DNA of 63,918 nt, counting the filler, from Octopus bimaculoides (Eukaryota), in assembly GCF_001194135.2 (NCBI RefSeq). It is 5 parts of 5 records of this genome, joined end to end, with 100 filler letters (N's around TTAATTAATTAA, not from the genome) between each part and the next. Parts side by side here need not be neighbours in the genome. Positions count along the whole stretch, not along the records: positions 1 to 24,062 come from NC_068984.1; 4 more parts are not named here. One strand, written 5' to 3'. The position numbers were made by a program, and so were the translations under genes. The notes beneath the pieces are model-generated. The model searched no databases. It saw only the letters and a program-made list of their open reading frames with translations, and was not told the DNA's origin. Positions 7,546 to 10,232 of the stretch are shown here, one piece after another; position 1 is the first letter of the stretch; each line of letters begins with the position of its first letter.

Positions 7546-8949
7546 ATTGCTAGAAGAAAAAAAGGGGGGGGCAAAACCCCCAGCTGAGAGGGTGAAGTAG
7601 TATTGAGGTGGTAGGGTTTTGTGGCAGATGAGAGATTAAATGTATAGAGGGCAGAGATAGGTGCCTTGCTATAGATACCTGGATGCTCTAGTTGGAAAAT
7701 ACAGGACAGTGAGTTAGAGAGTAAGATGAGGAGAGCAATAGTGGGAGAGATAATGGTGAAAATGTATCTGGACATGACTTTGAGGAACATCGGGCATGGT
7801 GAGAATAGGTGAGGTTAAATAGAGGTTTGAATTGGGCTGGTGAGCAGGATAGTGGTGACTGTAGCAAGTGATGGAAAGAAGTGCAAGAGGCTCGGGCAGG
7901 TAATGTGGTAGATAGATAAATAAGATGTTAATGATGGAGAGCAGCACAGGGGAGAGAAGATGCAGAAAGGAGGTGATTGATGGAGACAGTAGGCGGGGAT
8001 AGATAATGGAAAATGGAAGTGGTCTGGGGTGAGGGACGAGAGGTGACTGAGAAAACCAGAGTATGTCATATGTGCCTAGTCTGCTTTCTGGTGATAGAGA
8101 AGTGATGGGTGTTAGGGGATGAAATGTGGGGGGGGGGGAAGGTTGATAGGACAGAGAGGATATGGGTGGGGTGGGGTAAAGCCCTTCCCAGATGAGCGTT
8201 ACCAAGGTGGTTTTAGGATATCAGTTCTGTTGTAGTGGACAGCTGTAAATTTCTATTTCTCACTCACCCATTGTCATTCGTATTAACTCTACTCTTCGTT
8301 ACCTTTTCTTAAATACTGAATCGAATAGATTATTATAAGAACTAGTTAAATCAATAAGTTATTCTAGACCATCTCTAAATAGACATCAAGAGTCACTAAA
8401 ACCCATCATTCTCATTGCAGACATTTCTTTCACATTCCATATCCCGACCATCGATGAATTATAGTTATTACAAAAGATGCACATCAAATCAACTTTAACA
8501 ATAATAAAAAAAAAAAAGATCAGAATTAAAGGCATTCCTTAGTTTTGACAAGTTAGTTTCAGTAACGAAGGAATGTCATCTTATTTATTGTTATTGTTTA
8601 AATTATGTTTAATCAGTGATTTCAGAGCATCATGCGGTATGGAAGAGAACATCTATGCATATCTAGCAGCATGAAAATGTTTTCAATTAGCAAATCTGTA
8701 ATTTACTTTATATTACATGTAACACTGAAGTATCTTATTTCTTTCAAAAACAACAGGTCAACATTTCAGTTTGAAAGTATTATCCTGTAGGTGAAAGTCA
8801 ACAAGAAGACGGGGACAGCGAGTGAATATCATTGTTCTAACATTGTATTTGTCACTTGTATTGATTTTATGGTTAAAGAGTTCACGTAATAGTTCTATTT
8901 CTCATACATATCATTACAGATTTATTCATGTAAATCTTTGTCAACTTAC

Positions 8950-9030
8950 CGTTACTCGTATGTCAAACAGTAAATCAATGTATCAACCAAACTCCAAAAG
9001 AAATTATCTTGTTGTAAGATTGGGAACTTC
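8950..9030 (-). other. Putative non-coding first exon of ZNF-A
   Basis: Ends in the donor acg|GTAAGT (intron 8949-7052). It is the mirror-image homolog of 9690-9764. The 5' boundary is approximate. Confidence 0.55.
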
Positions 9031-9690
9031 AAACGTTTTATTCCCTTATATTACACAGAATAAAAGTTAGTATATCTGATCTTCTTCAGACATCAATTCG
9101 TATCTAATCACAATGAACCAGCTTCGTGTCTTTACTTGCACTTCCCATAAAATATATATCTGCGTATATCTGGCATTACATTTATCCTTTGTTTAAATGT
9201 ATATTAAATATATGTATTGCTTTAATGTATATTGTTTATAATAAGGTAATGATTCACAATGCTTAGAAGAGAAACACCGAGAATATTAATTCCGATATCA
9301 AAATCATTTAATTACGCTGAAAGAAGAATTATTGTAGATCACGACGGTTCTATGTTGTGCTATTCAGTCATAAATAAAAGACGAATTAAACAGTTTTACT
9401 TATCAAGCGGTTATTGCTAAATGTAGACCTAATAGTTTGGTCAGTCAATTGCACTGGATTGATATACAAAGAAAAGGCGATCATAACAGAAGTACATTAA
9501 ATGCAGATGTTTCTAAATTTGCATAAATGCAGATGTAGAAACAATTATGATTAGAATTTCTATATTGATTTAATATCTCTTGTGGAAAATAAATACTCAA
9601 ATGTTAAAACAATATTTTAGAGACAGATACGAATCGATGTCTACAGATGGAAATTATCAGACCGTTAGTGGCGTAGAATAAAGTGGAAAA
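9030..9690. promoter_or_regulatory. Putative bidirectional promoter between ZNF-A and ZNF-B
   Basis: TE-free AT-rich interval between two divergent homologous first exons. Contains ATTTGCAT at 9517-9524 and mirror copies of agatacgaat(t/c)gatgtct. Confidence 0.5.
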
Positions 9691-9764
9691 ATCCATGGAA
9701 AAGTCCAAACTAACAACGAGATAATTTCCTTTGGAGTTTGCTCACTGTTGTCATGTTGAAAAAG
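9690..9764 (+). other. Putative non-coding first exon of ZNF-B
   Basis: Ends in the consensus donor AAG|GTAAGT (intron 9765-11070). Homologous to the reverse complement of 8950-9030. The 5' boundary is approximate. Confidence 0.55.
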
Positions 9765-10232
9765 GTAAGTTGATAATGGTTTACTTGAATAAATCTGTAA
9801 TAGTGTGTGTAAATCACAGAATTATTACGCGAACCCTCCAAGCATACAGTAATTCTACCATTGAAGATACATTGGAACAAAGATGTTCGCCCGTCGTCGT
9901 CTTGTTGACTTTTACCAATAGGATTATACTTCCCAACTGAAATATTGATATGTTGCAGGTTTGCTAATTAAAAATCGGTAAATATTTTGTAATGGACATA
10001 ATTTTTTTTTCCATGAGCTCTTTCGAGTGCATTCAACGTATCTGATCTACAAACCTGTTGCAAGCCACTTTTTTCCGGAAAAGACAAACGGAGTTTTGTT
10101 TTTCTTTTCGTGCTTTTCAGCTTTTCACGGAAACACCCGAAGTGAAGTGTTTTGATTTTGTCGAGTTATATCGAAGGAATGCCTTACTTCACATACTTTC
10201 AACGGTAAATATTTCGTAAAAGACCCGTTCGT

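What the first reader, a model, noticed from the sequence alone, without database searches (positions are those of the whole stretch)
8690..9985. Mirror-image first exons: a bidirectional promoter formed by inverted duplication
The reverse complement of about 8690-9110 aligns with about 9620-9985. Examples: ttacaacaagataatttcttttggagtttg vs taacaacgagataatttcctttggagtttg (27/30) and ggtaagttgacaaagatttacatgaataaatctgtaat vs ggtaagttgataatggtttacttgaataaatctgtaat (34/38). Each arm contains a GTAAGT donor pointing toward its own ZNF acceptor (seen). ZNF-A and ZNF-B thus appear to be a head-to-head pair with starts under 0.7 kb apart, around a TE-free core carrying an octamer ATTTGCAT and a duplicated taaatgcagatgt. 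Co-regulated divergent pairs could be a building unit of the cluster (inference).
Basis: partly seen in the sequence, partly recalled or inferred. Interest (0 to 1): 0.72.

Follow-up and report, generated by a model that had tools for sequence, protein, structure and literature searches.

The report
Head-to-head duplicated zinc-finger gene pair
Two neighbouring zinc-finger genes are old mirror-image copies of one whole gene, so their upstream ends face each other about 0.5-0.8 kb apart; this is a common outcome of gene duplication, and a shared two-way promoter is plausible but not shown.

Summary
The mirror-image repeat is real. 8751-9023 matches the reverse complement of 9705-9955 at 70.5% over 275 nt (E 2e-31), and homology extends to about 8680-9108 and 9622-9975. 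It is not a promoter-sized duplication. It is the innermost of four collinear inverted blocks (3' flank, finger array, acceptor plus 5'UTR, upstream arm) that make ZNF-A (4687-6639, minus) and ZNF-B (11373-12488, plus) a whole-gene inverted duplicate spanning at least 4191-12913. All non-coding blocks are 67-72% identical, so common descent alone explains the arms.

The first-exon reading is plausible. Each arm carries the best donor-like site of its upstream interval (AAG|GTAAGT and ACG|GTAAGT). Both genes share an identical acceptor, TTTCAG|ATTAACAGAT, and a third paralog keeps the acceptor too. The candidate exons are non-coding. The donors lie 814 nt apart, so the pair would meet the under-1-kb definition of a head-to-head pair.

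No transcript data could be reached. The 519-nt spacer has background composition (27-31% GC), and the ATTTGCAT octamer occurs at chance frequency. Co-regulation and the idea of the pair as building unit of the cluster remain untested. Head-to-head paralogs make up 10-21% of linked animal duplications. This is an ordinary new member of a known kind.

The parts
4191..4686 (-). 3' flank/3'UTR of ZNF-A, homologous to the ZNF-B 3' flank (inverted) and the ZNF-C 3' flank (direct)
   Evidence: 4191-4403 matches 12913-12696 at 72% over 223 nt. 4210-4686 matches 20666-21145 at 67% over 505 nt.
4687..6639 (-). ZNF-A coding sequence (650 aa, starts MSKDRQK, 23 canonical C2H2 fingers), uninterrupted
   Evidence: ORF. 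Pfam zf-C2H2/zf-H2C2_2 with E 1e-105 to 1e-189 and no KRAB or other domain. Finger count.
6640..7051 (-). Predicted 5'UTR part of ZNF-A exon 2, starting at the acceptor tttcag|ATTAACAGAT
   Evidence: Acceptor identical to that of B. Block 7169-6778 matches 10967-11343 at 67% over 409 nt, E 4e-28. Stops in all frames.
7052..8949 (-). Predicted intron 1 of ZNF-A, largely filled by repeat insertions (7237-7528 matches other copies; GC-rich block about 7400-8300; A-run 8505-8520)
   Evidence: and sequence read.
8950..9108 (-). Arm A, upstream part: candidate non-coding exon 1 of ZNF-A (donor ACG|GTAAGT, last exon base 8950) plus proximal promoter. The whole arm A homology runs 8680-9108.
   Evidence: The donor ranks 1st of 110 GT sites in 9365-7052 on the minus strand. 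Non-coding.
9109..9621 (.). Unique AT-rich spacer between the arms. It holds the single ATTTGCAT (9517) and the 13-nt duplicate TAAATGCAGATGT (9498, 9524).
   Evidence: No homology to the other arm or to the rest of the piece. GC 27-31%, equal to background. No ORF above 53 aa in the spacer. No Rfam match.
9622..9764 (+). Arm B, upstream part: candidate non-coding exon 1 of ZNF-B (donor AAG|GTAAGT, last exon base 9764) plus proximal promoter. The whole arm B homology runs 9622-9975.
   Evidence: The donor ranks 1st of 112 GT sites in 9365-11070 on the plus strand, and only 2 of 2826 GT sites in the whole piece score as high or higher.
9765..11070 (+). Predicted intron 1 of ZNF-B. The first ~210 nt are homologous to the A intron. 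The rest is repeat insertions: 10233-10606 has three other copies at 86-95%, and 64-nt direct repeats sit at 10021-10084 and 10656-10719.
11071..11372 (+). Predicted 5'UTR part of ZNF-B exon 2
11373..12488 (+). ZNF-B coding sequence (371 aa, starts MSKMLRD, 13 C2H2 fingers)
   Evidence: The array is 77-78% complementary to the A array.
12489..12913 (+). 3' flank of ZNF-B, homologous (inverted) to the A 3' flank and ended by a SINE-like insertion at 12930
21262..23298 (-). Third paralog ZNF-C (ATG at 22749, array broken by an N gap at 21422-21579) with the same 5'UTR block and acceptor (exon 2 starts at 23157). Its exon 1 would lie beyond the edge of the piece.
   Evidence: A 7209-5491 matches C 23298-21607 at 78.5% over 1759 nt. 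Three-way alignment. Sequence.

Best explanation
The mirrored segment is the inner, promoter-proximal end of an old inverted duplication of a complete C2H2 zinc-finger gene.

Shown: ZNF-A (minus strand) and ZNF-B (plus strand) are reverse-complement copies of one ancestral unit. That unit consisted of an upstream arm, a short intron, a 5'UTR, a single-exon finger array and a 3' flank. The copies span at least 4191-12913 around a unique 519-nt spacer. They have since diverged by about 30% in non-coding DNA, changed finger number (23 vs 13), and each acquired its own repeat insertions in the interval between arm and acceptor.

Inferred: each arm contains a short non-coding first exon, ending at 8950 and at 9764, that is spliced to the conserved acceptor at 7051 and 11071. 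If so, the two genes are transcribed divergently from start sites less than 814 nt apart. Each most likely uses its own duplicated copy of the proximal promoter (about 50-150 nt of upstream homology). The spacer may add shared upstream elements. The symmetry is a by-product of how the gene was copied, not a purpose-built bidirectional promoter.
For: The inverted homology of the arms is far beyond chance (70.5% over 275 nt, E 2e-31; extents). Three further collinear inverted blocks exist. The acceptor plus 5'UTR block is 7169-6778 vs 10967-11343 (67% over 409 nt, E 4e-28). The arrays are 77-78% complementary. The 3' flanks are 4191-4403 vs 12913-12696 (72%). Non-coding identity is uniform at 67-72%, which fits one event copying the whole unit. 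The region is gap-free sequence, and 70% identity rules out a haplotype or assembly duplicate. The unaligned intron interiors are repeats with other copies in the piece, up to 95% identical, so they are much younger than the duplication. For the splicing inference: the 16-nt acceptor is identical in A and B (2 matches vs 0.07 expected) and retained in C. The mirrored donors match the MAG|GTRAGT consensus at 9/9 and 8/9 positions and rank first among 112 and 110 GT sites in their intervals. Stops in all frames show that the arms do not code for protein, and the products are pure finger arrays. By the published definition, a divergent pair with start sites no more than 1,000 bp apart is a head-to-head pair (PMC1487180). 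Head-to-head orientation makes up 10-21% of linked animal duplications (PMC3194840).
Against: There is no transcript, CAGE or annotation evidence. The proteins are not on record in any start variant and no close relatives were found. Within the arms, the candidate exon is no better conserved than the adjacent intron: the longest identical run, 16 nt, is intronic, and the 25-40 nt just before the donors align poorly, with a 14-nt indel. Conservation therefore gives no sign of exon function. The predicted 5'UTRs carry 7-8 upstream ATGs, which is many for an efficiently translated mRNA. The donor scoring matrix was approximate, using frequencies recalled from memory. The spacer and arms show no compositional signature of a promoter. 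TATA-like strings are too frequent in this AT-rich DNA to count as evidence (65+68 TATAWAW in the piece).
Confidence: 0.7

Rival explanations
1. The centre is a genuinely shared bidirectional promoter that co-regulates A and B, and such divergent pairs are the unit that was amplified to build the cluster.
For: The orientation pattern in the piece is minus, plus, minus. A and C are direct repeats offset by about 16.1-16.5 kb with B between them, as expected if an (A,B) pair was tandemly copied to (C,D). The 5'UTR block gives a slight ((A,C),B) signal: A-C 73.6% vs A-B 69.5% and B-C 70.5%. The donors are 814 nt apart. COL4A1|2, 3|4 and 5|6 are a precedent for a pair duplicated as a unit (PMC12141075).
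Against: The identity differences are small. In the 3' flank the order even reverses: A-B 72% vs A-C 67%. The predicted partner D and exon 1 of C lie outside the piece. Each gene has its own copy of the proximal region, so sharing is not required. The spacer has background composition and its octamer is at chance frequency. Cephalopod C2H2 paralogs of one clade are reported to fall into different co-expression modules (PMC12513265).
Confidence: 0.2
2. The arms are only relic upstream DNA carried along by the duplication. The GTAAGT motifs are not used, and the genes are transcribed from start sites elsewhere, for example close to the ATTAACAGAT block or from promoters supplied by the intronic repeats.
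For: Conservation in the arms equals that of other non-coding blocks (67-72%), and the exon is not better conserved than the intron. Strong donor-like sites do occur by chance: 15 GTAAGT in 24 kb. There are many upstream ATGs in the predicted 5'UTR.
Against: A polypyrimidine tract plus CAG is kept in all three paralogs, and A and B are identical over 16 nt there within a 67% block. A working acceptor needs an upstream exon. The best donor in each upstream interval is exactly the mirrored one, retained in both copies.
Confidence: 0.25
3. The 1.3 kb palindrome is a transposable element of foldback or long-terminal-inverted-repeat type, unrelated to the ZNF genes, that happens to sit between them.
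For: Two roughly 430-nt and 350-nt inverted arms lie around a unique core. The genome is repeat-rich.
Against: The inverted homology continues collinearly through the acceptor/5'UTR, the arrays and the 3' flanks, so the arms are part of the gene unit. There is no other copy in the piece. The outer ends of homology coincide with younger repeat insertions, not with sharp element termini.
Confidence: 0.04
4. The palindrome is transcribed as one unit and acts as a long hairpin RNA, a small-RNA precursor.
For: Folded as one RNA it gives -383 kcal/mol, against -254 +/- 9.6 for 25 dinucleotide shuffles (z = -13.5), with 260 inter-arm pairs.
Against: That result follows trivially from any inverted repeat. 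The longest uninterrupted helix is 17 bp at about 70% complementarity, which makes a poor Dicer substrate. Nothing indicates a transcript spanning both arms. There is no Rfam match.
Confidence: 0.03
5. Assembly artefact: a falsely inverted or duplicated segment.
For: The piece comes from a gapped draft assembly with three N runs.
Against: No gap lies between 3743 and 18026. The arms differ by 30% and by several indels. The two genes differ in finger number and carry different repeat insertions. Artefactual duplicates would be nearly identical.
Confidence: 0.02

Closest known systems
Linked inverted (head-to-head) gene duplicates in animal genomes
   Same: Two paralogs on opposite strands with 5' ends facing each other. 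The multi-exon structure was copied along with introns and flanks, so the event was DNA-based. PMC3194840 (Table 2) reports head-to-head as about 10-21% of linked duplication events and argues that most arise in one step.
   Different: Nothing essential. Here the copies are unusually close, with a 519-nt spacer between homology blocks, whereas that paper finds inverted pairs more common at larger distances.
COL4A1|COL4A2, COL4A3|COL4A4 and COL4A5|COL4A6 collagen IV pairs
   Same: Paralogous genes arranged head-to-head around a short intergenic promoter, with the pair itself later duplicated as a unit (PMC12141075; PMC1487180).
   Different: The collagen pairs have an experimentally shown shared bidirectional promoter and are conserved across Metazoa. 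Here promoter activity, start sites and a second pair are all unverified. The copies also still show alignable mirrored upstream DNA, so each has its own proximal region.
Divergent histone H2A/H2B gene pairs
   Same: Clustered, repeatedly duplicated divergent pairs with similar, short start-site distances (PMC1487180).
   Different: Histone partners are different genes needed in fixed proportion. Here the partners are paralogs of one DNA-binding family with no evident need for matched amounts. PMC1487180 also notes that only one of eight histone pairs with data was positively correlated in expression.
Vertebrate KRAB zinc-finger gene clusters
   Same: Rapidly expanding clusters of tandem C2H2 arrays with TGEKP-type linkers, all fingers in one large exon and small upstream exons. 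They are linked to transposable-element dynamics (PMC10547256).
   Different: There is no KRAB, SCAN or other effector domain here. The upstream exon is non-coding. Own knowledge, not tested here: vertebrate clusters are predominantly head-to-tail.
Lineage-specific C2H2 expansions of coleoid cephalopods
   Same: Effector-less multi-finger C2H2 genes in local clusters within an AT-rich, repeat-rich genome (PMC12513265). The SINE-like repeat at 12930-13290 resembles, from my memory only, an abundant octopod element.
   Different: Membership could not be tested, because no tool could name the source organism. That paper does not treat gene orientation, first exons or promoters.

Membership tests
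Inverted (head-to-head) whole-gene duplication | Reverse-complement homology between the two copies beyond chance | tested here: met
   70.5% over 275 nt, E 2e-31. Motif controls gave 0.00-0.07 expected matches.
Inverted (head-to-head) whole-gene duplication | Homology collinear over all parts of the gene unit, with 5' ends facing | tested here: met
   Four blocks in the same order and orientation: arms, acceptor plus 5'UTR, arrays, 3' flanks.
Inverted (head-to-head) whole-gene duplication | Both copies in one contiguous sequence and clearly diverged, so not an assembly or haplotype duplicate | tested here: met
   No N run between 3743 and 18026. About 30% divergence, different finger numbers and different repeat insertions.
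Head-to-head (bidirectional) gene pair as defined in PMC1487180 after Trinklein et al. | Two genes on opposite strands, divergently oriented | tested here: met
   ZNF-A on the minus strand and ZNF-B on the plus strand, with 5' ends facing.
Head-to-head (bidirectional) gene pair as defined in PMC1487180 after Trinklein et al. | Transcription start sites no more than 1,000 bp apart | tested here: inconclusive
   The predicted donors are 814 nt apart (8950 and 9764), so start sites of these exons would be closer than that. No start site has been mapped, and the exons are predictions.
Head-to-head (bidirectional) gene pair as defined in PMC1487180 after Trinklein et al. | The intergenic fragment drives transcription in both directions, or the two genes are correlated in expression | not testable with these tools
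   No expression, CAGE or reporter data were reachable.
CpG-island-type bidirectional promoter (typical vertebrate form) | Raised G+C/CpG content across the intergenic region | tested here: not met
   GC is 27-33% across 8900-9800, the same as the surrounding non-repeat DNA.
C2H2 (Krueppel-type) tandem zinc-finger genes | Multiple CX2CX12HX3H fingers joined by TGEKP-type linkers and matching Pfam PF00096/PF13465 above threshold | tested here: met
   A has 23 fingers, B has 13, and C has at least 12. E-values run from 1e-66 to 1e-189.
KRAB zinc-finger proteins | N-terminal KRAB domain (PF01352) | tested here: not met
   No KRAB or other non-finger domain in the ORFs. Stops in all frames upstream of the ATG and in the candidate exon 1.
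Foldback / long-TIR transposable element | Several dispersed copies | tested here: not met
   Only the two arms exist in the 24 kb piece. A genome-wide count was not possible, and the metagenome scan gave 0 hits, which is uninformative for an animal genome.
Foldback / long-TIR transposable element | Sharp element ends flanked by a target-site duplication | tested here: inconclusive
   The outer limits of homology (about 8680 and 9975) are fuzzy and abut younger repeats. No matching flanking short repeat is evident.
Pair-as-unit amplification (COL4A-like) | A second divergent pair whose members are each closest to the corresponding member of the first pair | not testable with these tools
   The upstream region of C and any partner lie beyond position 24062. 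Only a weak ((A,C),B) signal was seen.

The most novel reading that the evidence does not exclude
Divergent pairs of effector-less C2H2 genes with mirrored non-coding first exons around a spacer of roughly 0.5 kb are the recurrent amplification unit of this lineage's ZNF clusters. New ZNFs would then be born two at a time under a common control region and diverge in regulation only later.
Probability: 0.12. Interest if true: 0.5.

Novelty: new member of a known kind. Interest (0 to 1): 0.25.

Why it matters
If the splice junctions are confirmed, the locus gives a clean gene model for this effector-less ZNF family: a non-coding exon 1, an intron of about 1.3-1.9 kb filled with repeats, and one large exon holding the 5'UTR and all the fingers. 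It would also give a dated example of how such clusters grow by DNA-level inverted duplication of whole genes. That would help annotation, because first exons of such genes are easily missed. It would also allow a genome-wide test of whether divergent pairs are over-represented in these clusters. On its own, the arrangement is an expected outcome of gene duplication and opens no new question.

Tried and rejected
1. Transcript and annotation evidence. I ran exact look-ups of ZNF-A and ZNF-B products with five start variants. None is on record.

2. Homology search with ZNF-B. The results were swamped by vertebrate multi-finger proteins.

3. Organism identification.
   - The LINE-like ORF at 23729-24061 gave one 71% hit on an unnamed 688-bp NCBI contig, GCA_024449705.1. 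A paper search for that accession found nothing relevant.
   - The SINE-derived ORF gave no hits.
   - tRNA and Rfam scans of the piece were empty.
   - The octopod attribution therefore rests only on my memory of the SINE-like repeat and on the character of the genes.

4. Public-collection scans for the exon-1 motif and for the SINE core in metagenome contigs gave 0 hits. I did not scan the bacterial/archaeal and viral collections, because they are irrelevant to an animal locus.

5. Octamer and 13-mer as promoter evidence. I rejected this, because ATTTGCAT occurs once in the piece against about 1.9 expected from composition. The 13-mer pair is a local 26-nt microduplication.

6. Coding potential of the arms or spacer. 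I rejected this, because stops occur in all frames, the longest ORF overlapping the arms is an 82-aa GTG-initiated ORF on the strand opposite gene A (8822-9070), and the longest ORF within the spacer is 53 aa.

7. Hairpin-RNA reading. The fold is strong, but only because of the repeat itself.

8. The bacterial promoter/terminator scanner was not used, because it is not applicable to an animal genome.

9. The cephalopod C2H2 paper was searched for orientation, promoter and exon statements. It contains none. Albertin et al. 2015 is not held in the library.
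Full report
**What is in the piece**

The usable sequence (1-24062) is AT-rich animal DNA, about 63% A+T. It has three assembly gaps, at 3546-3742, 18027-18132 and 21422-21579. It carries three long open reading frames made only of C2H2 zinc fingers:
- ZNF-A: 4687-6639, minus strand, 650 aa, 23 fingers.
- ZNF-B: 11373-12488, plus strand, 371 aa, 13 fingers.
- ZNF-C: 21262-22749, minus strand, interrupted by a gap.

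Pfam finds only finger families and no KRAB, SCAN or BTB domain. The rest of the piece is rich in dispersed repeats.

No tool could name the organism. The ZNF search was swamped by vertebrate proteins, with a best local identity of 61% among the 120 listed hits. A LINE-like ORF hit only one unnamed NCBI contig. A repeat-derived ORF hit nothing. From memory only, the SINE-like element at 12930-13290 and the effector-less ZNF cluster look octopod.

**Checking the observation**

- The repeat finder reports five collinear inverted segments between 8680-9105 and 9625-9974, at 75-87% complementarity.
- blastn joins 8751-9023 with 9955-9705 at 70.5% over 275 nt, E 2e-31.
- A global alignment puts the inner limit of homology at about 9108/9622 and the outer limit at about 8680/9975.
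- Both quoted example pairs are exact.
- The GTAAGT motifs, the two acceptors, the ATTTGCAT octamer (9517) and the duplicated 13-mer (9498, 9524) are all present.
- The arm sequence has no third copy in the piece.

**What the repeat is**

The mirror symmetry does not stop at the arms. Oriented by gene, A and B share four blocks in the same order:
1. The upstream arm.
2. A block covering the last ~110 nt of the interval before the acceptor, plus the whole 5'UTR: 7169-6778 vs 10967-11343, 67% over 409 nt, E 4e-28.
3. The finger arrays, 77-78%.
4. The 3' flank: 4191-4403 vs 12913-12696, 72%.

The inverted duplicate therefore spans at least 4191-12913, around a unique spacer of 519 nt.

The parts of the two upstream intervals that do not align are repeat insertions. 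B carries an element at 10233-10606 with three other copies in the piece, up to 95% identical. A carries repeat fragments at 7237-7528, a GC-rich block at about 7400-8300 and an A-run at 8505-8520. These insertions are much younger than the duplication and differ between A and B.

With them removed, the ancestral unit is alignable almost end to end at a uniform 67-72%. Three things follow:
- The arms are linked to the ZNF gene unit, so they are not an unrelated dispersed element.
- One event copied the whole gene.
- The survival of the arm homology needs no selective explanation.

An assembly artefact is excluded by the 30% divergence, the different finger numbers and the gap-free sequence.

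**Are the arms first exons?**

Evidence in favour:
- A and B have an identical 16-nt acceptor context, TTTCAG|ATTAACAGAT. There are 2 matches in the piece against 0.07 expected.
- The third paralog C keeps the pyrimidine tract and the CAG at the homologous place.
- A retained acceptor implies an upstream exon.
- On the gene strand between the centre and each acceptor, the best donor-like site is the mirrored one. AAG|GTAAGT ranks 1st of 112, and ACG|GTAAGT ranks 1st of 110. Only 2 and 12 of the 2826 GT sites in the piece score as high or higher than the B and A donors. The matrix used for this was approximate.

The candidate exons do not code for protein, since stops occur in every frame. The main ATG lies 300-412 nt into exon 2.

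Evidence against, or neutral:
- The exon part of the arm is not better conserved than the intron part. The longest identical run, 16 nt, is intronic. The 25-40 nt before the donors align poorly.
- The predicted 5'UTRs hold 7-8 upstream ATGs.
- No transcript evidence could be obtained.

I put the two-exon model at about 0.6.

**Is it a bidirectional promoter?**

The donors are 814 nt apart. If the exons are real, the start sites are closer than that, and the pair meets the operational definition of a head-to-head pair: divergent genes with start sites no more than 1,000 bp apart (PMC1487180).

Upstream homology extends only about 143-158 nt beyond each donor. Each gene would therefore have its own duplicated copy of a very short proximal promoter, and the 519-nt spacer is unique and asymmetric. 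The more economical picture is two mirrored promoters, possibly with shared upstream elements in the spacer, rather than one shared core.

The spacer gives no independent sign of promoter function:
- Its GC content is 27-31%, the same as background.
- The octamer occurs once in the piece, against about 1.9 expected from composition.
- TATA-like strings are everywhere in this DNA.
- A TATA-like AATA(T)AAG sits about 30 nt before the best-conserved 31-mer in both arms (read). For the reason just given, I treat this only as a hint.

**Is the pair a building unit of the cluster?**

The piece shows the orientation pattern minus, plus, minus. A and C are direct repeats offset by about 16.1-16.5 kb, with B between them. 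A tandem copy of a divergent pair would produce this pattern.

The supporting tree signal is weak. In the 5'UTR block, A-C is 73.6% against A-B 69.5% and B-C 70.5%. In the 3' flank the order is reversed. Exon 1 of C and the predicted partner lie beyond the edge of the piece.

Published work on cephalopod C2H2 expansions reports that paralogs of one clade usually belong to different co-expression modules (PMC12513265). That argues against lasting co-regulation, if the locus is indeed cephalopod.

**Comparison with what is known**

Head-to-head orientation accounts for about 10-21% of linked gene duplications in the animal genomes surveyed, and most such pairs appear to arise in one step (PMC3194840). 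The collagen IV genes are the classic case of a head-to-head paralog pair with a shared promoter that was later duplicated as a pair (PMC12141075, PMC1487180). Histone H2A/H2B pairs are another clustered example.

The present locus is a new instance of this known kind in an effector-less C2H2 cluster. It differs from vertebrate KZFP genes in lacking KRAB. It differs from typical vertebrate bidirectional promoters in lacking any GC enrichment.

**Other readings**

- Foldback element: contradicted by the collinear gene-wide homology.
- Hairpin-RNA locus: the fold is strong (z = -13.5) only because of the repeat. The longest perfect helix is 17 bp, and no spanning transcript is indicated.

**Verdict**

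The feature is the inner end of an old whole-gene inverted duplication that created a divergent ZNF pair. Mirrored non-coding first exons and close divergent promoters are a reasonable but unproven inference. Shared regulation and pair-wise cluster growth are open. Interest is low to moderate.

Noticed in passing
12930-13293 and 20047-20416: Two copies (79-93% identical in segments) of a SINE-like repeat that ends in a TA/GT-rich microsatellite. One copy abuts the end of the ZNF-B 3' homology block. ARAGORN and Rfam do not recognise it. A homology search with the ORF running through it found nothing.
   Followed up: partly
503-860, 10233-10606, 14505-14876, 18805-19188: Four copies (86-95%) of a roughly 370-nt GC-rich dispersed repeat. 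One lies inside the predicted ZNF-B intron. The copy at 368-1006 also has flanking parts that match the ZNF-A intron (7237-7374, 7467-7528), so different portions of one repeat family sit in the two introns, both in plus orientation. This points to independent insertions.
   Followed up: partly
10021-10084 and 10656-10719: 64-nt direct repeats (84%) bracket about 570 nt of the ZNF-B intron, including the GC-rich repeat. They could be the ends of a composite or nested element.
   Followed up: no
23639-24062: A reverse-transcriptase-free fragment of a LINE-like ORF is cut by the edge of the piece, inside the predicted intron of ZNF-C. Its only database relative is a 96-aa ORF (71% identity) on an unnamed 688-bp contig of assembly GCA_024449705.1. 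It has no Pfam match.
   Followed up: partly
21262-22749: ZNF-C is interrupted by a 158-N gap (21422-21579), and the finger frame differs on the two sides of the gap. Because gap length is only an estimate, this does not show that C is a pseudogene.
   Followed up: no
4687-6639 vs 11373-12488: The two inverted paralogs differ almost twofold in finger number, 23 vs 13. Within ZNF-A some 84-nt units are 84-87% identical to non-adjacent units, for example 5073-5372 vs 5577-5876. This indicates internal array duplications after the gene duplication.
   Followed up: no
6790-6800, 11330-11340, 22880-22890: A second acceptor-like motif, CAG|YTGA after a T-rich run, is kept in all three paralogs 35-150 nt before the start codon. 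No conserved donor precedes it inside exon 2, so it may be an alternative acceptor or just conserved UTR.
   Followed up: partly
9637-9681 and 9093-9067 (minus): The innermost conserved block, AGATACGAATYGATGTCT, contains an ATG at the same aligned position in both arms. It opens short upstream ORFs of 14 and 8 codons that share only Met-Ser. If transcription starts at the inner edge of the arms, these would be conserved-position uORFs.
   Followed up: no
7400-8300: A block with 44-51% GC and strong G-over-C skew (up to +0.70) sits in the ZNF-A intron. Its minus-strand ORFs (102 and 163 aa) are proline- and serine-rich and have no Pfam match. It is followed by an A-run at 8505-8520 and is probably a retroposed element.
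   Followed up: partly
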